Assembly (NCBI GenBank): GCA_051294905.1
Contig: CM119376.1
Span: 16,492,001-16,556,000 of the forward strand
DNA length: 64,000 bases
DNA from: Botryllus schlosseri
Taxonomy: Eukaryota
Direction: 5' to 3'
The translations under genes and the position numbers were made by a program. Positions within the stretch are counted from its first letter, which is position 1; each line of letters starts with the position of its first letter. Below, in pieces: positions 5,591 to 61,972 of this stretch. The notes below the pieces were generated by a model. It worked only from the letters and a program-made list of their open reading frames with translations. It was not told where the DNA came from and did not search any database.

Positions 5591-6110
5591 TCATTCGCTC
5601 AAAAATATATTCATGTTATCGAATTATATGTAGGCTACATAAAGCTTGTGATCCGACTCTGATCAGACGTAGTGGCACAAGCTATAGTTACAGCTGATAT
5701 GAACATTGTACAATATTGCACACCCGGTCAAAATGCTCTGAAGCATTAAATTGCCTGTTTATTGTGCTAGCTTTAGCTAGTCATTGGTATTTTTAATGCG
5801 GATCTCTGGTACACCCCAGTACACCCCATTTGAGTCGTACACCCTTTTGCAATTTCGGTACACCCCAGGGTGTACGATATACACCCGGTTGAAGAGCCCT
5901 GTTCTAGAATACCATGAGTTATCACAAGAAACTCGCACTCAAGAATGCGGGCCTCAAAGCGACTTTAAACTTAAGATTTGAGTTACGTTATTGAATACCA
6001 TTCATTCTTGTTTGAGGCACAAGCAGTGCTTGAGCACCGATTGGGATTCTTGAATTCAGGCCGTGGAAATCACCACTTCTACTTACTTCAACTTCTACTT
6101 ATGTAACAAC

Positions 6111-50362: not shown

Positions 50363-52105
50363 CGTGGTAGCTGAATCTGGGATACTTACTATACGTTATG
50401 TACAACTGATTGGTGGTGCAAAACCGGAATATAACTTTCATAAGTTTTACGTTATGTTTATGTTGTAAAATGTGATTCAGCGAAAATCGGTGATCCGATG
50501 CATCATTATTTTAGGTGTCATTACATTATGTGGTTTAGAAATTATATTGGGTTACTGAAAAATCGCCCCGACTACTCGATATGCTTCGTTCGATGGACAT
50601 ATTTGCCGTAATCAAACAGCTGTGTGGTGGTAAAAATGCAGTTGTTTCATTGAAGCAGCAACATAATAAAGATGGATGTGTTCGTACAACAAAACAACAT
50701 GATTAAGTTCCTTTCGAAACGTGTCTGTGACAATGACCATTACTGTCATTGTCCTTCAACGAACATTGGTAAATATTCAATTTCGTCGCGTGGCATGCAG
50801 TTCGACTTCGAGGTGATGCGAACAAAGGATCTGCTAGCCTATAATAGGCCACGGAAAACTGCAATACATTTCGCCAAAATGCTCGTTGATGGACATTGTC
50901 AAATTGGACATGCACTGTTGCGCATTATCAAAAGAGGCATTTTCCATCTAAATCCTAATTTAATGTTTCAGTCCCCTTTTGTTATTGTTGATGGGTGTGC
51001 GCGCTCCTCTTTAATAAATTACTACTTTACCAGAAAAACCAGTATTTTCACTACCACGCATTTTTTTGCAAGAGTTTCGCATTAAAAATAATAATGTGGA
51101 ATAATTTGGCAACGAACCAACACAAATTATAAACCACAGAAAGTAATGACACCCGAAATTTAAATAGCATCGATCAGCTGACAGCGATTAGTTGGATTAG
51201 TAGTCTGGTACCACCATGGAAAATTCCATGCTGATACTCATTCATTCATATTTGCGCAGCTGTAAATAAAACGAAGACACGGAGATGGGACTCTATCGTC
51301 CTTATCACTTGCTCTATGCGACCACAACTACGGAAATGTTTTTCTCACTGCTCATTATTTGTCACTGTTGTAATTACGCGAAGGAATGAATCATTGATAG
51401 CGTCGGTAGGCGTGGCGTAGAGATACTGTTTTAGCAAGTATACCAATGAAAACTTGAACGAAGATGACTGACGGACTCATCGCTGGAGTATATACAATAC
51501 CCAGTATAACATTAGACCTATGTGAGGTGATTATCTGCGACTGTTACCCGTCAGTGTGTGATAATGTAGTTTTACTTAGCATTGGAATCAATGTCCTATG
51601 CTCACACAATTCCTTATCTTTTTTATATATTTTATGAAATTACTTCAACTTGGAGAATCATTGGGGTCAAGTGTAGAATACGGCCACCTCGAGAAAGTGA
51701 TCCCCATGACCATCACCGATCAGTGTTGCACCTGAAACTTCAGTGCTGCACCTGAAACTGTCGGAATTCAGAGTGCTTCACGTAGTTACCGACTATGCTC
51801 CCCACTAGACCCTATAAATCCTGTCAAGGTTCCATATTATATCTTATCATATTATTATATCTTGAATTCACAGATACACATGCCGGTGACGAGCAAGATT
51901 ACATTTTACATCGCTCGCTCGCATACCAGATGAACGGCTTGTACAAGAAATCGAAAGAAAGGGGAAAGGAAGCGACTTACTCCAATCTCTTCACCACATT
52001 ATGTATTGTGTATCGCATTTTTATCGAAAATATAAAAAATAAAACGCATGACGCCTATGCCCGCGCAGTTGCCCAGAAAAGACCCGACGTAAGAAAGTAC
52101 TCATG

Positions 52106-54530
52106 TACACTTATGTGAAGACACTCGCATAGTCGCGTATCATACCAAGTGTACTTTCCAGCCACAATAGTTATGTACAGACACTCGCATAGTCGGGTAT
52201 GATACCAAGTGTACTTTTCAGCCACAATAGTTATGTACAGACACTCGCATAGTCGCGTATCATACCAAGTGTACTTTTCAGCCACAATAGTTATGTACAG
52301 ACACTCGCATAGTCGGGTATGATACCAAGTGTACTTTTCAGCCACAATAGTTATGTACAGACACTCGCATAGTCGGGTATGATACCAAGTGTACTTTTCA
52401 GCCACAATAGTTATGTACAGACACTCGCATAGTCGCGTATCATACCAAGTGTACTTTTCAGCCACAATACTTATGTGAAGACACTCGCGTAGTCGCGTAT
52501 CATACCAAGTGTACTTTTCAGCCACAATACTTATGTGAAGACACTCGCATAGTCGCGTATCATACCAAGTGTACTTTCCAGCCACAATAGTTATGTACAG
52601 ACACTCGCATAGTCGGGTATGATACCAAGTGTACTTTTCAGCCACAATAGTTATGTACAGACACTCGCATAGTCGGGTATGATACCAAGTGTACTTTTCA
52701 GCCACAATAGTTATGTACAGACACTCGCATAGTCGCGTATCATACCAAGTGTACTTTTCAGCCACAATACTTATGTGAAGACACTCGCGTAGTCGCGTAT
52801 CATACCAAGTGTACTTTGCGGCCAAGGCTACTCATGTAGGTACTCTCCAATAATAGGGCATGATACCAAGTGTACTTTTCAGCCACAATACTTATGTGAA
52901 GACACTCGCATAGTCGCGTATCATACCAAGTGTACTTTGCGGCCAAGGCTACTCATGTAGGTACTCTCCAATAATAGGGCATGATACCAAGTGTACTTTT
53001 CAGCCACAATACTTATGTGAAGACACTCGCATAGTCGCGTATCATACCAAGTGTACTTTCCAGCCACAATAGTTATGTACAGACACTCGCATAGTCGGGT
53101 ATGATACCAAGTGTACTTTTCAGCCACAATAGTTATGTACAGACACTCGCATAGTCGCGTATCATACCAAGTGTACTTTTCAGCCACAATACTTATGTGA
53201 AGACACTCGCGTAGTCGCGTATCATACCAAGTGTACTTTTCAGCCACAATACTTATGTGAAGACACTCGCATAGTCGCGTATCATACCAAGTGTACTTTC
53301 CAGCCACAATAGTTATGTACAGACACTCGCATAGTCGGGTATGATACCAAGTGTACTTTTCAGCCACAATACTTATGTGAAGACACTCGCGTAGTCGCGT
53401 ATCATACCAAGTGTACTTTTCAGCCACAATACTTATGTGAAGACACTCGCATAGTCGCGTATCATACCAAGTGTACTTTCCAGCCACAATAGTTATGTAC
53501 AGACACTCGCATAGTCGGGTATGATACCAAGTGTACTTTTCAGCCACAATAGTTATGTACAGACACTCGCATAGTCGGGTATGATACCAAGTGTACTTTT
53601 CAGCCACAATAGTTATGTACAGACACTCGCATAGTCGCGTATCATACCAAGTGTACTTTTCAGCCACAATACTTATGTGAAGACACTCGCATAGTCGCGT
53701 ATCATACCAAGTGTACTTTCCAGCCACAATAGTTATGTACAGACACTCGCATAGTCGGGTATGATACCAAGTGTACTTTTCAGCCACAATAGTTATGTAC
53801 AGACACTCGCATAGTCGCGTATCATACCAAGTGTACTTTTCAGCCACAATACTTATGTGAAGACACTCGCGTAGTCGCGTATCATACCAAGTGTACTTTT
53901 CAGCCACAATACTTATGTGAAGACACTCGCATAGTCGCGTATCATACCAAGTGTACTTTCCAGCCACAATAGTTATGTACAGACACTCGCATAGTCGGGT
54001 ATGATACCAAGTGTACTTTTCAGCCACAATACTTATGTGAAGACACTCGCGTAGTCGCGTATCATACCAAGTGTACTTTTCAGCCACAATACTTATGTGA
54101 AGACACTCGCATAGTCGCGTATCATACCAAGTGTACTTTCCAGCCACAATAGTTATGTACAGACACTCGCATAGTCGGGTATGATACCAAGTGTACTTTT
54201 CAGCCACAATAGTTATGTACAGACACTCGCATAGTCGGGTATGATACCAAGTGTACTTTTCAGCCACAATAGTTATGTACAGACACTCGCATAGTCGCGT
54301 ATCATACCAAGTGTACTTTTCAGCCACAATACTTATGTGAAGACACTCGCATAGTCGCGTATCATACCAAGTGTAGTTTCCAGCCACAATAGTTATGTAC
54401 AGACACTCGCATAGTCGGGTATGATACCAAGTGTACTTTGCGGCCAAGATACTCATGTAGGTACTCTCGCATAATAGGGCATGATACCAAGTGTACTTTG
54501 CGGCCAAGATACTCATGTAGGTACTTTCCA
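52106..54530 (-). repeat. 60-bp tandem satellite array, left arm of the Merlin element (about 40 units)
   Basis: Unit gccacaatagttatgtacagacactcgcatagtcgggtatgataccaagtgtacttttca with a few recurrent variants. 61-bp variant units occur near 52820-52880 and 52940-53000, and type-II units near 54430-54530. Confidence 0.97.
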
Positions 54531-54648
54531 CAGCCCTGTACTCATCAAATCTTGTTTCCAGCCACAATACTCAGGTGTATCATGTTTATTTGTGAAAGAA
54601 CGAAACAAAGAAAATTGAACGAAATTGCAGGAATGGTGCATTCTCATA

Positions 54649-55815
54649 TTAAAATTGATACTCTGGATGAGTCGCAATCGCATGAATGATATCGGGGAAG
54701 TAATGTGCCCTATCTCTAGTTCTTCGCCACATCCACTCATCAATATAGGAGGGCACAAAACTTCTTACCGAACCATTCATGCGATTGAATTTTCTTTTGC
54801 AATCTCGCCATTGACTTTCAATATTATTGGTATGCACGCCGTCGGGTGCCACGTATAAATCCTTATGACACACCGATTTGTGCGTATAATTCAGGCCCAT
54901 TCCTGTTAACGAAATATAAATACTTTCATGAAAGTGATCGTTATCGTTGAAATATATATTTTTACCGTTTATGCCACGATATGCAGCCCATTGATCGGAC
55001 CAAATTTCAGTCCCTGGAGCAATGTATTGCCGAATAATCGGCAAAAGTGTACCGGCGTCGCGACGATCGACGAATCGCATGAAGCATTGACTGCATAAAA
55101 CATTTATTATTCTTTAAGTTTTGCTAACCTTGGGTGGTATTTTCTGTATACAAACTTCGTTGCAAGATCCACGCCTCCAAATATCCACTGTTGTGGGACG
55201 GGCCTTGCCTGGGCGTTTGCCCCACGGCCGCGCTTGGCTATGACAGACTCGTCAATAGCCACAACGTGTCCTAGACCACCAACGACGCCGGAGCCTCTCA
55301 GTAGCTCACTCGAGCAGACCTTGAAAATATCACAGAGTAATCATAGTGCCATGCTATACAATTAAACTTGGAAATTACCTCCCTGAAAAATTGACACCAG
55401 TCAATGCAGGTCCGATTACTGATCTTTAATTCGTGTATGATCGAGACCTGCAAATGGTCCTGTGACCAAAAGTAGAGGAGGTACAGTAGTTGCAATACCG
55501 TCAGATTGCTTTTGTAAAAGAAAGAACCAAGACGTATGCTCCAAAAATTCTTGCATTTCTGTGAATGAAAAATGTCACAAAATATTAGTTTCTGGCTCCA
55601 ACAAAAAAAAATGTATGACTTCCTACCGGACAACGCCAGGCGGTCTGATCTTTGACGTTCCTGAATTTTTCAGCGCATGGCACGCTGCATTGTGGGCAAT
55701 TCTGTTGCCTTGCAAGTAGTCCATGCTGCCTGAAAAACTGAATGGCTGCAGTGTTGCTTGACAGCGCGCCCATTCCAATGAGCTCTGGTATGCCTACACC
55801 AACTAAACTCGCCAT
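54649..55815 (-). CDS. Merlin/ISXO2-like DDE transposase, 5 exons, 303 aa, apparently intact
   Basis: Exons 55815-55627, 55558-55379, 55319-55156, 55090-54966 and 54902-54649 (912 nt); introns 68, 59, 65 and 63 bp, all GT-AG. N-terminal Zn-ribbon CPQC..WRCPKC, then VAIDES (D), WIFGG, IWSDQWAAY (D), HTNNIESQW (E) and YIDEWMWRR. Confidence 0.9.
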
Positions 55816-56275
55816 GCTTAGGCTACTGATAAATGTGGGCTATGAAATGAAATGATATATTATTTAGCGATGATTTGTTTTACAACTTTTATTACAACAT
55901 AAAATTATTCATAGATAGAAATCAGCCTAATTCTAAAGGCCACTATAGTTTCTACTGCGCCTAATTTTTAATTATATTCCTGCAAGTTTGCAAGTTTCTC
56001 TTTCCTGTTCATTCATTCGTTACTTGCATTCACATCTTCACCGCCTTTTGTTGACCAAACGCTGCTGAAGTTATTGCTCGACTTACACATGGAAGAGTCG
56101 TGTTCATCAGGCCCGGAAACTCTTCCACCGTGATCAATTATTAAGTTCATTGTTAATCACAATGTTTTTTCCGGTTTATGAGCATGTACCATTGTTGAAG
56201 ATGATACCTTCATGTGACCAATGTGGGTTGACGTACATAAGGACGCATTCTGACTGTACAATGCCTCTCGACATG

Positions 56276-56530
56276 CCTACATGTACCTACATGAGTATCT
56301 TGGCCGCAAAGTACACTTGGTATCATGCCCTATTTTGCGAGAGTACCTACATGAGTATCTTGGCCGCAAAGTACACTTGGTATCATGCCCTATTATTGGA
56401 GAGTACCTACATGATTATCTTGGCCGCAAAGTACACTTGGTATCATACCTATCATTGGAGAGTACCTACATGAGTAGCCTTGGCCGCAAAGTACACTTGG
56501 TATCATGGCCAATTATGCGAAAGTACCTAC
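56276..56530 (+). repeat. Short internal array of the related type-II 60-bp unit (about 4 units)
   Basis: Repeats of gagtacctacatgagtatcttggccgcaaagtacacttggtatcatgccctatt.., sharing aaagtacacttggtatcat with the main satellite. Confidence 0.9.
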
Positions 56531-57346
56531 ATGAGTATCGATGCCATTTCTTTTACATTGCTGGACAAGCTGGGATAAAGACCAATTTCAAGAACGTGCT
56601 CTTTGTCAAAGTCATCCAGCGATATGCTCTTTGTATGAAATATGTCAATGAATTCAACTGCATCGCACTTCACAAAGGCCCATTTGAAATTTTCCGGCAA
56701 TGGTATTGGCGTCCACATTAAACGGAGTACTGAATAGTCAGAATTCATTTTGTAGAGAAGGAATGTTGGAAAAGCGGGTGAATATTCACTTATTCAGTAG
56801 TTAAATTTCGTATCACAGTTAGAAATGTAGTGTTGGTACTAGGTTTTCTCTCCTCCAGTATAGGAAAGTGAGCATAATTTTCTTTGTAGGCTACTGTTGA
56901 CATTTCAAGAGTCACAGATTCGTTTAGAATGCGCCTAAACATCTCATCTATCCCCCTGAAGTTGCAAATTCAATTTGTTCAGATGCGACGTTAAATGTAC
57001 CAGGAAAGCAAGAAGAGATACCCATTTTCGATTACAAGATTATGAGTCGGCGATATTAGAGGAAAGTTGCTACTTCATTTCTCAGTTCATAGACTCGTGT
57101 AAGCATAGCTGCTTGACTTAATGCGTGAACATGACAGATATAGGCCTACAGGACATCGCCATATTGATTCTCTGCTTAGTAATATCTGGCGTAACTGATT
57201 CAGTTAATGAGACAAAAATCATATTAACAGTTTTCCCCATTGCAAGGAAGGACACCCTTATTGTCACACCCCATTAGAGTGGTAAACTATTTAAAAAAGT
57301 ATGGAACACCTTCGGTTGCGAGATACACTCGATTGATAAGCACTGA

Positions 57347-57440
57347 TCCAGTCGATGAATGGATGTGGCGTCGGACCAGAGAAAGAGATCATTACTTTTC
57401 GGACATTGTTCAGGAAATCGCCAGGCAACACCCAGTGTAA
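57347..57440 (+). pseudogene. C-terminal remnant of a second, diverged Merlin transposase
   Basis: DEWMWRRTRERDHYFSDIVQEIARQHPV* aligns with DEWMWRRTRDRAHYFPDIIHAIATHPEYQF* of the intact gene. The downstream cctgcaatttcgt segment also matches that gene's 3' flank. Confidence 0.85.
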
Positions 57441-57649
57441 AATGAGCCCTTTAATTTATTGAGATTTGACTGCTCAGAATTATCTAGTTATCGAAGTGTG
57501 CCTGCAATTTCGTAATTCCGTTTTTTTCTACATTTCGTTTCGTTTTTGTTTTGTTGATAAACGTGCTGCCATTGGCTATAGTTCGAGTCTATCTACATTT
57601 GACCGGACGTTGGAGTAGGAGTCAGGGTCAGGGCCATTTCTATAATATG

Positions 57650-59534
57650 CGAGTGTCTATACATAAGTATCGTGGCTGGAAAGTACACTTGGTATCATAC
57701 CCGACTATGCGAGTGTCTGTACATAACTATTGTGGCTGGAAAGTACACTTGGTATGATACGCGACTATGCGAGTGTCTGTACATAACTATTGTGGCTGAA
57801 AAGTACACTTGGTATGATACGCGACTACGCGAGTGTCTGTACATAACTATTGTGGCTGAAAAGTACACTTGGTATGATACGCGACTATGCGAGTGTCTTC
57901 ACATAAGTATTGTGGCTGAAAAGTACACTTGGTATGATACGCGACTACGCGAGTGTCTTCACATAAGTATTGTGGCTGAAAAGTACACTTGGTATCATAC
58001 CCGACTATGCGAGTGTCTGTACATAACTATTGTGGCTGAAAAGTACACTTGGTATCATACCCGACTATGCGAGTGTCTGTACATAACTATTGTGGCTGAA
58101 AAGTACACTTGGTATCATACCCGACTATGCGAGTGTCTGTACATAACTATTGTGGCTGGAAAGTACACTTGGTATGATACGCGACTATGCGAGTGTCTTC
58201 ACATAAGTATTGTGGCTGAAAAGTACACTTGGTATCATGCCCTATTATTGGAGAGTACCTACATGAGTAGCCTTGGCCGCAAAGTACACTTGGTATGATA
58301 CGCGACTATGCGAGTGTCTTCACATAAGTATTGTGGCTGAAAAGTACACTTGGTATGATACGCGACTACGCGAGTGTCTTCACATAAGTATTGTGGCTGA
58401 AAAGTACACTTGGTATGATACGCGACTATGCGAGTGTCTGTACATAACTATTGTGGCTGAAAAGTACACTTGGTATCATACCCGACTATGCGAGTGTCTG
58501 TACATAACTATTGTGGCTGAAAAGTACACTTGGTATCATACCCGACTATGCGAGTGTCTGTACATAACTATTGTGGCTGGAAAGTACACTTGGTATGATA
58601 CGCGACTATGCGAGTGTCTTCACATAAGTATTGTGGCTGAAAAGTACACTTGGTATGATACGCGACTACGCGAGTGTCTTCACATAAGTATTGTGGCTGA
58701 AAAGTACACTTGGTATGATACGCGACTATGCGAGTGTCTGTACATAACTATTGTGGCTGAAAAGTACACTTGGTATCATGCCCTATTATTGGAGAGTACC
58801 TACATGAGTAGCCTTGGCCGCAAAGTACACTTGGTATGATACGCGACTACGCGAGTGTCTTCACATAAGTATTGTGGCTGAAAAGTACACTTGGTATGAT
58901 ACGCGACTATGCGAGTGTCTGTACATAACTATTGTGGCTGAAAAGTACACTTGGTATCATACCCGACTATGCGAGTGTCTGTACATAACTATTGTGGCTG
59001 AAAAGTACACTTGGTATCATACCCGACTATGCGAGTGTCTGTACATAACTATTGTGGCTGGAAAGTACACTTGGTATGATACGCGACTATGCGAGTGTCT
59101 TCACATAAGTATTGTGGCTGAAAAGTACACTTGGTATCATGCCCTATTATTGGAGAGTACCTACATGAGTAGCCTTGGCCGCAAAGTACACTTGGTATGA
59201 TACGCGACTATGCGAGTGTCTTCACATAAGTATTGTGGCTGAAAAGTACACTTGGTATGATACGCGACTATGCGAGTGTCTGTACATAACTATTGTGGCT
59301 GAAAAGTACACTTGGTATCATACCCGACTATGCGAGTGTCTGTACATAACTATTGTGGCTGAAAAGTACACTTGGTATGATACGCGACTATGCGAGTGTC
59401 TGTACATAACTATTGTGGCTGAAAAGTACACTTGGTATCATACCCGACTATGCGAGTGTCTGTACATAACTATTGTGGCTGGAAAGTACACTTGGTATGA
59501 TACGCGACTATGCGAGTGTCTTCACATAAGTGTA
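57650..59534 (+). repeat. 60-bp tandem satellite array, right arm (about 31 units), inverted relative to the left array
   Basis: Reverse complement of the same unit. 61-bp variant units occur near 58230, 58770 and 59130. Confidence 0.97.
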
Positions 59535-60136
59535 CATGAGTACTTTCTTACGTCGGGTCTTTTCTGGGCAACTGCGCGGGCATAGGCGTCATGCGTTTTA
59601 TTTTTTATATTTTCGATAAAAATGCGATACACAATACATAATGTGGTGAAGAGATTGGAGTAAGTCGCTTCCTTTCCCCTTTCTTTCGATTTCTTGTACA
59701 AGCCGTTCATCTGGTATGCGAGCGAGCGATGTAAAATGTAATCTTGCTCGTCACCGGCATGTGTATCTGTGAATTCAAGATATAATAATATGATAAGATA
59801 TAATATGGAACCTTGACAGGATTTATAGGGTCTAGTGGGGAGCATAGTCGGTAACTACGTGAAGCACTCTGAATTCCGACAGTTTCAGGTGCAGCACTGA
59901 AGTTTCAGGTGCAACACTGATCGGTGATGGTCATGGGGATCACTTTCTCGAGGTGGCCGTATTCTACACTTGACCCAATCATTGCTGCTCACCTGTTATA
60001 TTAGGCAAAACGTACCGAGATTCCAGTAGCGCTTATCGATATAGTCTTCTAAAATTGTCTCTTTTTAGCCCAGGCTTACAAAGAAATACTTAATGCTTGA
60101 TTAGACTGAAACTATGCATATGAAACGGAACTTATC

Positions 60137-61972
60137 ATGAGCAGATTCCGGCAGTCCTCGATTGCGGATAATGTTATCAACGAGAATTCGAATGTAGGTT
60201 TGTCTGAAAGGCCGCTAATACGTTCAAATTCCAGCTTCTATAGAAGTCGTACATTGGAGCATTTGTCGGAAGAAAAGAAAGCAAAGCGGGTTCACTTTTA
60301 CCGTAACGGTGATCGATTTCACCAAGGTGCCACTTATGCTATATCTGGAACAAGGTTTCGTACATTCGATGCACTTTTAACGGACTTGACGAGGACACTA
60401 TCAGACACAGCCAATCTTCCGTTTGGTGTTCGGTCTATATTTGCTATCAAAGATTGGCGGAAGGTTGATTGCCTTCGCGATATTGAACATGGAGAAAGCT
60501 ACGTTTGCTCATCTGGAGAGGGTTGCAAAAAAATGGATTATCTTCAAAACACCACCCCAAACTGGTCTAAAAATAGACAAGGTGGGTTGAAATCACAGTC
60601 ATTAACAAGGCTTACAAACACAAGACTTTCTTTTAGCGACAAGAATTATCGCTTGATGAGCGAGAGAAAGTCTTTCAAGGCTAACCGAGATTTTATTCGT
60701 CCCAAGTTAATTACTGTTATCAGAAATGGTGTTAAACCTCGCAAGGCAATTAGGATACTTTTAAACAAGAAAACAGCCCACAGTCTCGAACAAGTTGCCA
60801 GCGAAATCACAACAGCCATAAAACTAGACACTGGAGCGGTACGGAAAATATACACACTTGCCGGTAAGGAGGTGAAAGAGCTCCGTGACTTTTTCGGTCC
60901 TGAGGAAGTTTTCATCGCTTGCGGATACGAAAAGTTAACGTATGAAGATTTCGAGATCGACAGTTCTGAGAAAAGTTTATGCAAATCTTATGAGACCCCA
61001 AGGGCGCGTCGACGAAGTTTGAAAATCCGCCCCGAAAGTGATCGAGAAACCGGCAGGCTGGTTCTGTCCAACAAAGCGCAGTCCACCATGTCTTTGAACA
61101 CTGTCGAACCGCTTATCGCCGAACGAAATTATCCCCCAAAGTTACTTGAAGAGTTCAATGTGCTTTCGAATATTGGTGACGGACATTATGCTTCGGTAAA
61201 AGAATGCATGAACCGAGCCACTGGGAAGCGTTACGCTTTGAAAGTGGTGCTTGCAGAAGATTCGAGCGATTGCAGATTTGACAACGAGACTACTATCCTC
61301 AAACAAATGCGTCATCCCAATATTGTAAGACTAGTGAGGGATTTTATCTCAGACCGGGGGACTTATGTTGTGATGGAATTAGCAAATGGCGGCGATCTGT
61401 TTGATGTAATTTCAAGAGGAACCAAATTCTCTGAAGACGACGCTTGTGGCATGCTGCACAACATTGCCAGTGCCTTGCTGTACCTCCACAACCGTAACGT
61501 TGTTCATCGTGACGTCAAACCGGAGAATCTTTTAGTGTATCTCTACAAGGATGGTACCAAGGCCCTTAAACTAGGTGACTTTGGGTTAGCCACAGTGCTG
61601 GCCGACAAACCACTCTACACAATATGTGGCACACCTACGTATGTTGCTCCGGAAATTATTCTACAAAAGGGCTACGGCCTTGAAGTAGATATATGGGCGG
61701 CGGGTGTAATCACTTATATATTACTGTCTGGTTCACCTCCTTTCAGCTCATCAACTGATAATCAGGAAGAGCTGTTTGATATTATCATTTGTGGGAGGCT
61801 GGAATTTCCATCGCCGTCATGTGATTGTATTTCACAGTCTGCACGCAGTTTGATCCAGGGAATGTTGCAGCACAGTAGGACTTCCAGGTTGACTGCTTCG
61901 GAAGTTCTAAATCATAATTGGCTATCGGAAGGAAATGTCTTTAATTCAGTTCGGGAGAGTATTGAAATTTGA
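60137..61972 (+). CDS. DCLK: Doublecortin-like Ser/Thr kinase (two DCX domains plus kinase), single coding exon, 611 aa
   Basis: Uninterrupted ORF. DCX1 contains FYRNGDRFHQG..RFRTFDALL..NLPFGVR and DCX2 contains RPKLITVIRNGVKPRKAIRILLNKKTAHS. Kinase motifs are GDGHYA, ALK, HRDVKPEN, DFG and CGTPTYVAPE. Confidence 0.95.
   Translation: MSRFRQSSIADNVINENSNVGLSERPLIRSNSSFYRSRTLEHLSEEKKAKRVHFYRNGDRFHQGATYAISGTRFRTFDALLTDLTRTLSDTANLPFGVRSIFAIKDWRKVDCLRDIEHGESYVCSSGEGCKKMDYLQNTTPNWSKNRQGGLKSQSLTRLTNTRLSFSDKNYRLMSERKSFKANRDFIRPKLITVIRNGVKPRKAIRILLNKKTAHSLEQVASEITTAIKLDTGAVRKIYTLAGKEVKELRDFFGPEEVFIACGYEKLTYEDFEIDSSEKSLCKSYETPRARRRSLKIRPESDRETGRLVLSNKAQSTMSLNTVEPLIAERNYPPKLLEEFNVLSNIGDGHYASVKECMNRATGKRYALKVVLAEDSSDCRFDNETTILKQMRHPNIVRLVRDFISDRGTYVVMELANGGDLFDVISRGTKFSEDDACGMLHNIASALLYLHNRNVVHRDVKPENLLVYLYKDGTKALKLGDFGLATVLADKPLYTICGTPTYVAPEIILQKGYGLEVDIWAAGVITYILLSGSPPFSSSTDNQEELFDIIICGRLEFPSPSCDCISQSARSLIQGMLQHSRTSRLTASEVLNHNWLSEGNVFNSVRESIEI

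What the first reader, a model, noticed from the sequence alone, without database searches (positions are those of the whole stretch)
54430..57700. Core looks like a head-to-head fusion of two different Merlin elements (composite-transposon-like)
Seen: the intact transposase runs on the minus strand toward the left arm. A diverged C-terminal remnant (57347-57440) and its 3' flank run on the plus strand toward the right arm. A short type-II array (56276-56530) lies upstream of the intact gene and stops without a TIR. Inference: both outer termini are the same '3-prime' end, the original 5' end was lost, and two related elements in inverted orientation now transpose together. The outer TIRs would have been homogenised although the inner transposase sequences are well diverged.
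Basis: partly seen in the sequence, partly recalled or inferred. Interest (0 to 1): 0.75.

Follow-up and report, generated by a model that had tools for sequence, protein, structure and literature searches.

The report
Chimeric Merlin transposon with captured filler
One jumping gene of the Merlin type carries its own working enzyme gene, the tail end of a second, long-diverged Merlin enzyme gene facing the other way, and a stray 0.8-kb piece of unrelated DNA between them. This is the patchwork that faulty repair of broken transposons is known to produce, so it is instructive but not a new kind of element.

Summary
The Merlin element (51664-59976, 8-bp TSD AATCATTG) has an apparently intact five-exon transposase gene on the minus strand. 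To its right, on the plus strand, lie the last 28 codons plus stop of a second Merlin transposase and a weakly homologous 3' flank.

The two C-termini differ at essentially every synonymous site but at only 16% of non-synonymous sites. They therefore come from two long-separated functional lineages, not from decay of an inverted duplicate.

The core has three parts, not two. The 814 bp at 56540-57353 is foreign DNA, 90% identical to two metagenome contigs without Merlin features. The type-II array is the stub of a right arm that mirrors the inner end of the left arm (99%). The outer arms are identical over 480 nt.

I read it as a chimera made by break repair with template switching in the satellite arms (Pack-TIR-like). 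Fusion of two whole elements followed by TIR homogenisation is less likely but not excluded.

The scan noted another Merlin with 60-bp-unit arms elsewhere in this genome (s1-243951).

The parts
51656..51663 (.). Left target-site duplication AATCATTG
   Evidence: Read directly from the sequence. Identical to 59977-59984.
51664..52143 (+). Left arm, outer part: tip GGGTCAAGTGTAGAATACGGCC..., about 447 nt of unique sequence, and the start of the array
   Evidence: 0 mismatches in 480 nt against the reverse complement of 59497-59976. The tip motif occurs only at the two ends.
52144..54425 (+). Left-arm 60-bp array: 38 units of types A-G, including two F (type-II-like) units
   Evidence: TRF period 60, 39.9 copies. 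Unit typing gives the order BCDDCEABDCEFAFAB....
54426..54530 (+). Two type-II (GATAC-variant) units H and I at the inner end of the left arm
   Evidence: 54430-54524 is 98.9% identical over 95 nt to the reverse complement of 56283-56377. Unit sequences.
54531..54648 (-). 3' flank of the intact gene, holding a decayed type-I-like unit at about 54545-54590
   Evidence: Read from the sequence. Weak collinear similarity to 57441-57645, including a shared CCTGCAATTTCGT.
54649..55815 (-). Intact Merlin transposase gene A. Exons 55815-55627, 55558-55379, 55319-55129, 55090-54966 and 54902-54649 (312 codons).
   Evidence: Pfam PF12762, E 1.7e-14. Collinear tblastn of full-length relatives. Frame, stop and GT..AG check. 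The 63-nt intron equals a 21-aa gap against P0051. Splice sites are inferred; there is no RNA evidence.
55816..56282 (-). 5' upstream region of gene A
   Evidence: No similarity to any other part of the element.
56283..56539 (-). Stub of a right arm: 4.3 type-II units (O, N, M, L and a 38-nt partial unit), cut in mid-unit at 56539
   Evidence: TRF. Motif orientation is the same as the right arm. Unit typing. Mirror of 54426-54530.
56540..57353 (.). Filler X: captured foreign DNA
   Evidence: Window 56537-57243 and 57244-57353 are 90.4% and 91.8% identical to ENA contig L001. 56537-57242 is 90.6% identical to L002. Homology stops at the array break with a 3-nt overlap ATC and at the first remnant codon. 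No similarity to the rest of the element and no Merlin profile hit.
57354..57440 (+). Remnant of transposase B: last 28 codons plus stop (DEWMWRRTRERDHYFSDIVQEIARQHPV*)
57441..57645 (+). 3' flank of remnant B
   Evidence: Collinear weak homology to the 3' flank of gene A.
57646..57705 (-). Edge unit K of the right array, with private substitutions, truncated at 48 nt against the B flank
   Evidence: Unit typing.
57706..59496 (-). Right-arm 60-bp array: 30 units of the same exact variants A-F (plus J) as the left arm
   Evidence: TRF. Order BCDCAFABDCEFCEAB..., collinear with the left arm for 12 units.
59497..59976 (-). Right arm, outer part and tip
   Evidence: Perfect mirror of 51664-52143.
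59977..59984 (.). Right target-site duplication AATCATTG
   Evidence: Read directly from the sequence.

Best explanation
The core is a three-part chimera inside one mobile Merlin element.

- Part 1 (54426-56539) is the transposase cassette of lineage A. It is flanked on both sides by inverted type-II satellite units, that is, by the inner ends of a symmetric pair of long satellite-bearing arms.
- Part 2 (56540-57353) is an 814-bp piece of unrelated DNA copied from elsewhere in the genome.
- Part 3 (57354 to about 57705) is a relic of a second Merlin lineage B that was functional for a long time: its last 28 codons, its 3' flank and one edge unit of its array.

Most likely history (inferred, not shown):
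- A double-strand break, or an excision gap, arose in the right-arm satellite array of a symmetric element A.
- The broken end was extended on an ectopic template that already carried filler X joined to the B relic, probably a deleted non-autonomous B-lineage copy.
- Entry into that template was by microhomology (ATC at 56537-56539). Return to A's own right arm was by homology in the shared 60-bp array.

This places the patch inside A's right arm. It leaves both outer arms as A's own, which explains their identity without any homogenisation step. The element then transposed as one unit using the outer tips and the A transposase, giving the single 8-bp TSD. The inner relics have no role in movement.
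For: Shown:
- One TSD and identical tips.
- Gene A appears intact.
- Inverted type-II units lie on both sides of gene A at 98.9% identity, and the stub has right-arm polarity.
- The stub is cut in mid-unit and joined to DNA with independent homologues. Those homologues carry no Merlin or satellite features, and two of them agree with each other for 356 bp past the junction.
- There is a 3-nt overlap at that junction.
- The remnant is a true Merlin C-terminus, closest to gene A, with pS about 1 and pN 0.16.
- The neutral distance on the remnant branch is bounded at about 0.3 substitutions per site.
- The arms have 0 of 480 mismatches, use the same six exact unit variants, and are collinear for 12 units.
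- There is a sharp step from edge unit K (private changes) to consensus units.

From the literature:
- Gap-filling with template switching at microhomology (median 2 bp) is the documented origin of Pack-TIR elements in animals.
- Repetitive foldback TIRs are hot spots for such switching (PMC8277862).
- Co-resident divergent Merlin families and internal tandem repeats are known (PMC8101967).
Against: - Only one copy was seen. No progenitor (a symmetric A without the patch, or a B-lineage copy carrying the X-remnant junction) could be retrieved.
- The direction of the exchange cannot be told from this copy. It could be a B patch placed into A, or an A cassette placed into a B-derived shell.
- A 9-mer, GCCATTTCT, stands near both edges of the 1106-bp segment and is not explained by this model.
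- The assembly across kilobase inverted satellite arrays could not be checked with reads.
Confidence: 0.5

Rival explanations
1. Two whole Merlin elements of different lineages joined head to head. A lost the outer part of its 5' arm and B lost everything but its 3' end. B's 3' arm became the new right end, and the outer arms were later made identical by gene conversion between arms.
For: - Two lineages lie in head-to-head order.
- The B flank meets the array at nearly the same unit phase as in A, as expected of a native B arm.
- Edge unit K is diverged, as edge units of homogenised arrays often are.
- The arms share exact unit variants but differ in unit order beyond unit 12. This shows the arrays do exchange and rearrange.
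Against: - It requires conversion of about 2.3 kb, including 447 nt of non-repetitive sequence, to 100% identity. The two lineages' synonymous sites are saturated and their 3' flanks are barely alignable.
- It does not account for the 814-bp foreign filler between the two parts.
- The B part holds no other transposase sequence.
Confidence: 0.15
2. The reverse transplant. The shell (both outer arms, X, remnant, B flank) is a non-autonomous, internally deleted B-lineage element. The A cassette with its type-II flanks (54426-56539) was copied into it by the same kind of template switching, re-arming a dead element with a transposase from a sister lineage.
For: - It needs the same number of junctions: one in-phase array junction (units G to H at about 54425) and one illegitimate junction (56539/56540).
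- GATAC-variant type-II units occur only next to the A cassette, on both sides.
- On the right side the order remnant, flank, K, array, tip would be wholly native.
Against: - A's own 3' flank holds a decayed type-I-like unit, so A natively had type-I units too.
- If the arms belonged to old lineage B, their perfect identity to each other would need a separate explanation.
- No copy of such a shell was seen.
Confidence: 0.15
3. A single-lineage relic. An old inverted duplication of the element's 3' end once reached into the last codons of the gene, forming a very long TIR. The inner part has since decayed while the outer part was kept alike.
For: There is mirror symmetry of C-terminus, flank and array on both sides.
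Against: - A dead duplicate would change at non-synonymous sites as fast as at synonymous ones. Observed values are pN 0.16 against pS about 1, and P < 2e-4 for a neutral distance of 0.5 or more.
- The remnant keeps the conserved Merlin ending and stop position better than the live gene does. It scores higher against 37 of 48 outgroup C-termini and against 40 versus 15.
- The foreign filler abuts the remnant.
Confidence: 0.05
4. An independent insertion. The 1.1-kb segment is a separate small transposon, or a retrocopy, that landed in the right arm and made its own target duplication (GCCATTTCT at 56543 and 57633).
For: A 9-nt exact direct repeat stands within a few bases of both edges of the segment. 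The chance of such a placement is roughly 5e-4 by my own estimate. Nine base pairs is a Merlin-compatible TSD length.
Against: - The ends of the segment are not inverted repeats, and there is no GG tip and no poly-A.
- The left 9-mer and the 6 nt before it belong natively to filler X. They are present, with one mismatch, in contig L001 at the same place.
- The array phase overlaps by 26 nt at only 78% identity across the segment, which is not a fresh duplication.
Confidence: 0.03
5. Assembly artefact. The kilobase inverted satellite arrays caused a false join of two loci.
For: Long inverted tandem arrays are hard to assemble. Array lengths and unit order may be wrong.
Against: - The two informative junctions (stub-X and X-remnant) lie in unique sequence, not in the repeat.
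- Matching 8-bp TSDs tie the two tips to one insertion.
Confidence: 0.04

Closest known systems
Merlin superfamily of eukaryotic DNA transposons (IS1016/IS1595-related; Feschotte 2004 as summarised in PMC8101967)
   Same: - DDE_Tnp_IS1595 transposase, 8-bp TSD and tips starting GG.
- Several divergent families co-resident in one genome.
- Internal tandem repeats have been reported in Merlins.
   Different: - Reported TIRs are 24-462 bp. Here the inverted arms are 2.3-2.9 kb and mostly made of a 60-bp satellite.
- The interior is a chimera of two lineages plus foreign DNA.
Pack-TIR elements and gap-filling capture in animals (PMC8277862), and abortive gap repair giving deleted or filler-bearing Ac/Ds and P derivatives (my own knowledge of Rubin and Levy 1997 and related work)
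   Same: - Foreign DNA sits between the TIRs of a cut-and-paste element.
- Junctions are illegitimate with 0-3 nt of microhomology.
- Repetitive TIRs are the likely site of breakage and switching.
   Different: - The element is still autonomous.
- The patch also carries a relic of a sister transposase lineage.
- The parental locus of the filler in this genome was not identified.
Foldback and Galileo-type elements of Drosophila (long TIRs built of tandem repeats)
   Same: - Kilobase inverted arms made of tandem units, with unit number and order differing between the two arms of one copy.
- A tendency to structural rearrangement.
   Different: A different transposase superfamily (Merlin rather than MULE- or P-related). 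Relatedness was not tested; the resemblance is architectural only.
Bacterial composite transposons (two IS copies bracketing cargo) and maize 'double Ds'
   Same: Pieces of two related elements in inverted orientation moving with the outermost ends.
   Different: - The second element is a relic of about 350 bp without ends of its own or a gene.
- There are no inner tips.
- Nothing suggests that each half could move alone.

Membership tests
Merlin superfamily | Transposase with a DDE_Tnp_IS1595 (PF12762) catalytic domain | tested here: met
   Pfam E 1.7e-14, 54.5 bits against a cutoff of 27, on the last ORF. There were 2763 library hits, all Merlin/IS1595-like, the best at 53-55% identity.
Merlin superfamily | DDE triad in conserved blocks | tested here: met
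   IDES, SDQW and NNIES lie at residues 145, 218 and 254 of the five-exon model. They align with full-length relatives. The identification of the catalytic residues themselves is by alignment only.
Merlin superfamily | 8- or 9-bp target-site duplication | tested here: met
   AATCATTG at 51656-51663 and at 59977-59984.
Merlin superfamily | TIRs with terminal 5'-GG | tested here: met
   Both tips read GGGTCAAGTGTAG.... The outer 480 nt are identical.
Merlin superfamily | N-terminal zinc-finger region | tested here: inconclusive
   CPQC ... WRCP-KC is seen across exons 1 and 2 by eye. Exon 1 aligns to the N-termini of P0058 and P0068. Pfam gave no hit on the separate exon ORFs. The joined protein was not searched.
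Composite transposon (two mobile elements bracketing a core) | Two elements, each with its own pair of ends | tested here: not met
   The tip sequence occurs only at the two outer ends. The second lineage is represented by 28 codons, a flank and one array unit only.
Composite transposon (two mobile elements bracketing a core) | The flanking elements are copies or relatives in direct or inverted orientation and supply the transposase | tested here: not met
   Only gene A is intact. Remnant B cannot encode a transposase.
Pack-TIR / gap-filling capture | Non-transposon DNA lying between the TIRs, with a homologue outside the element | tested here: met
   Filler X is 90-92% identical to contigs L001 and L002, which lack Merlin and satellite features. 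It is unrelated to the rest of the element.
Pack-TIR / gap-filling capture | Microhomology or a blunt join at the breakpoints | tested here: met
   There is a 3-nt overlap, ATC, at 56537-56539 between the array unit and X. At the X-remnant junction the donor B sequence is unknown, so the overlap there cannot be measured.
Pack-TIR / gap-filling capture | Parental copy of the captured DNA in the same genome | not testable with these tools
   The genome outside this window could not be searched. X does not recur in the window.
Foldback-like architecture | Long inverted arms composed of tandem repeats | tested here: met
   40 and 31 units of 60 bp in inverted orientation. This is a likeness of form, not of descent.

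The most novel reading that the evidence does not exclude
The right arm really is the 3' arm of an anciently diverged second Merlin lineage, rewritten to perfect identity with the left arm by conversion between the inverted satellite arms. That would make this copy a caught-in-the-act case of concerted evolution of transposon ends. It would show how a cut-and-paste element that lost one end can recruit and re-tailor the end of a relative, with the arrays of tip-like 60-bp units supplying the homology.
Probability: 0.15. Interest if true: 0.5.

Novelty: new member of a known kind. Interest (0 to 1): 0.3.

Why it matters
It gives a clean, datable example of modular rebuilding of a eukaryotic cut-and-paste transposon. 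Within 3.3 kb there are a live gene, a relic of a sister lineage that was functional until fairly recently, and captured foreign DNA, all moving on one pair of ends.

It supports the view that satellite-filled TIRs are break-prone sites where template switching shuffles transposon parts and picks up host DNA. If family copies are compared, the order of events and the question of TIR homogenisation become directly testable. For annotation, it warns that the interior of this family is not one consensus.

Tried and rejected
Closed or exhausted routes:
- Exact-product look-ups of four window ORFs found nothing.
- The word search with the last transposase ORF gave at best 46% identity.
- The full library search gave at best 53-55% identity and nothing at E <= 1e-30. 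No close relative of lineage A or B is public.
- The word search with the 107-aa ORF of the arm found nothing.
- A metagenome scan for the tip found nothing. The scan for the monomer core gave four chance matches with no further similarity.
- The search of earlier findings by sequence was blank.

Ideas tested and dropped:
- More of transposase B hidden in 56540-57350: no (profile search; DNA comparison).
- A 'WRCPVG' match on the minus strand at 57144-57170 as a second zinc finger: E 0.28, with no CxxC upstream.
- An 'FRQWYWR' stretch in X as a third Merlin C-terminus: E 6, no Pfam hit.
- Nested insertion of the A cassette with its own TSD: the flanking 8-mers differ (read).
- Naming filler X by Pfam or NCBIfam: no hit.

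No search or fold was done with joined exons. The exons were searched apart. The join was made only in a local script, to count length, frame and stops.

Full report
**Element and its limits.**
- The finding sits inside one Merlin-type element, 51664-59976 (8313 bp).
- Both tips read GGGTCAAGTGTAGAATACGGCC, and the 8-mer AATCATTG flanks each end (51656-51663 and 59977-59984).
- The outer 480 nt of the two arms are identical, with 0 mismatches.
- Each arm then runs into a 60-bp tandem array, 40 units on the left and 31 on the right.
- Both arrays are built from the same six exact unit variants. They are collinear for the first 12 units (BCD-xxx-ABDCEF) and arranged differently further in.
- Every unit carries a tip-like motif, CAAGTGTA-N7-GCC, pointing inward like the tip itself. 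It has 78 matches in the window, 77 of them in the element, against 0.12 expected.
- Nothing else in the 64-kb window resembles the element.

**Checking the observation: the intact gene.**
- The minus-strand gene is real and apparently intact.
- Pfam DDE_Tnp_IS1595 scores E 1.7e-14 on the last ORF.
- Full-length Merlin proteins from the library align in collinear pieces to four blocks.
- A 21-aa gap against P0051 coincides with a 63-nt GT..AG stretch, which I take for a fourth, in-frame intron.
- The five-exon model is 55815-55627, 55558-55379, 55319-55129, 55090-54966 and 54902-54649. It gives 939 nt, 312 codons, one stop and four GT..AG introns of 68, 59, 38 and 63 nt.
- The splice sites are inferred.

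**Checking the observation: the remnant and the array.**
- The plus-strand remnant is also real. It shows 68% identity over 28 residues to the intact C-terminus, E 1.8e-8.
- It is the only hit of a 33-sequence Merlin profile in 56540-57445, at profile positions 269-296, E 6e-6.
- Its 3' flank is collinearly and weakly similar to the intact gene's 3' flank. The score is z about 3.8, 2 of 500 shuffles reach it, and nothing appears in reverse.
- The type-II array is at 56283-56539 and stops in mid-unit.

- Its innermost units are 98.9% identical over 95 nt to the inverted inner end of the left arm, 54430-54524.
- Its motif orientation is that of the right arm.
- Gene A, with 118 bp of 3' flank and 467 bp of upstream sequence, is therefore bracketed by inverted type-II units. 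It sat in a symmetric long-armed element.
- The array is the stub of that element's right arm, not a 5' structure of another kind.

- The 73-aa minus-strand ORF at 56527-56748 found one protein at 82% identity. Its two metagenome contigs were fetched.
- Window 56537-57243 and 57244-57353 match contig L001 at 90.4% and 91.8%. Window 56537-57242 matches L002 at 90.6%.
- The homology begins three bases inside the last array unit (ATC) and ends exactly before GAT GAA TGG, the first remnant codons.
- The contigs have no Merlin coding similarity and no satellite motif.
- They agree with each other for 356 bp beyond the left edge of the shared stretch. The window holds a piece cut out of a longer sequence.
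- In L001 an unbroken 130-aa ORF covers what are two broken ORFs in the window. It matches no Pfam or NCBIfam family.
- This 814-bp filler X shows no similarity to any other part of the element.

**Two lineages.**
- Over the 28 aligned codons, the remnant and the intact gene differ by 16.0 synonymous changes on 16.2 synonymous sites. They differ by 11.0 non-synonymous changes on 67.8 sites (pS about 1, pN 0.16, Fisher p 2e-10).
- If the remnant had been dead since the split, its branch alone would give pN of 0.37 to 0.55 for neutral distances of 0.5 to 1. The observed 11 of 68 then has P of 2e-4 to 3e-11. The data allow at most about 0.3 substitutions per site of neutral drift.
- The remnant's peptide scores higher than the live gene's against 37 of 48 outgroup C-termini, and against 40 versus 15 in the larger set.
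- It keeps the common ending ...IARQ(H/Y)PV-stop. The live gene has the other natural ending, ...IATHP(E/N)Y.
- Yet the nearest known relative of the remnant is the gene next door. The best library match has 58% identity with gaps.
- So two sister lineages, both under selection for most of their separation, contribute to this core. The single-lineage 'decayed inner TIR' idea is rejected.

**How the pieces came together (inference).**
- Young parts: both outer arms, the two type-II blocks, and gene A with its flanks.
- Old or foreign parts: X, the remnant, the B flank and the edge unit K, which carries private substitutions.
- Two junctions are illegitimate: stub to X with a 3-nt overlap, and X to remnant. 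One junction lies in phase inside the array, from K to the next unit.
- The simplest single event is repair of a break in A's right-arm satellite. The broken end primed on an ectopic template carrying X joined to the B relic, and returned through the shared array.
- This is the gap-filling and template-switching route described for animal Pack-TIRs. In that study microhomology had a median of 2 bp, and repetitive foldback TIRs were singled out as switching sites (PMC8277862).
- Under this reading both outer arms are A's own, and their identity needs no extra step.
- The reverse (A cassette copied into a B-derived shell) needs the same number of junctions and cannot be told apart here.
It requires conversion of 2.3 kb, including 447 nt of non-repeat sequence, between lineages whose neutral sites are saturated. 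It also leaves the filler unexplained.
- An independent insertion with its own TSD is unlikely. The segment has no inverted ends, and the left copy of the 9-mer GCCATTTCT is native to X. That 9-mer near both edges remains unexplained.

**Comparison with known systems.**
- The element meets the Merlin criteria tested: domain, DDE blocks, 8-bp TSD and GG tips.
- The literature summary gives TIRs of 24-462 bp, notes several divergent Merlin families in one genome, and reports internal tandem repeats (PMC8101967). The kilobase satellite arms are outside the reported TIR range, but that is the subject of a neighbouring finding.
- It is not a composite transposon in the bacterial sense. There are no inner tips and no second gene.
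- In form it resembles foldback-type elements, and in origin Pack-TIR or abortive-gap-repair derivatives.

**Limits.**
- One copy only.
- Exact-product look-ups, the word searches, the full library search and both metagenome DNA scans gave no family member.
This suggests that simpler members exist and that the decisive comparison is feasible on the full assembly.

**Verdict.**
- Observation: confirmed.
- Interpretation: partly supported. Two lineages lie head to head and move as one unit. However, the core is a three-part patchwork best explained by template-switch repair.
- This is a new member of a known kind, of moderate interest.

Noticed in passing
window 60137-61972 (+): An uninterrupted 611-aa ORF with two doublecortin domains and a protein kinase domain (DCLK-like; Pfam Pkinase 3.6e-70, DCX 8.4e-35). 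It starts only about 160 bp from the right end of the transposon, so the element sits in the gene's immediate upstream region.
   Followed up: partly
window 56543-56551 and 57633-57641: The exact 9-mer GCCATTTCT stands 3 nt inside the left edge and 4 nt inside the right edge of the 1106-bp foreign segment. The left copy is native to filler X. It is not a TSD, and its meaning, if any, is unknown.
   Followed up: partly
window 54903-54965 (-): A 63-nt AT-rich GT..AG stretch inside the last transposase ORF. It keeps the frame open and equals a 21-aa insertion relative to other Merlins. It is probably a short in-frame intron. The other inferred introns are also very short (38-68 nt).
   Followed up: partly
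window 5703-5817; L001 1661-1778: About 115 bp at 76% identity between the window and the metagenome contig that also carries the filler homologue. It looks like the end of another repeat family (...GGTACACCCC) shared by the two source organisms.
   Followed up: no
window 51795-52118 (+) and 59522-59845 (-): A 107-aa ATG-started ORF lies in the non-repeat part of each arm. It has no homologue by word search and is not on record as a called gene. It is probably not coding.
   Followed up: partly
window 51720-51759 and 59881-59920: A 20-bp unit (TCAGTGCTGCACCTGAAACT) is tandemly doubled in the subterminal unique part of both arms.
   Followed up: no
L001 931-1320 (+): In the metagenome relative, the filler region holds an unbroken 130-aa ORF with no family match. 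The window copy is split by a stop or frame change, as expected of a captured, decaying fragment.
   Followed up: partly
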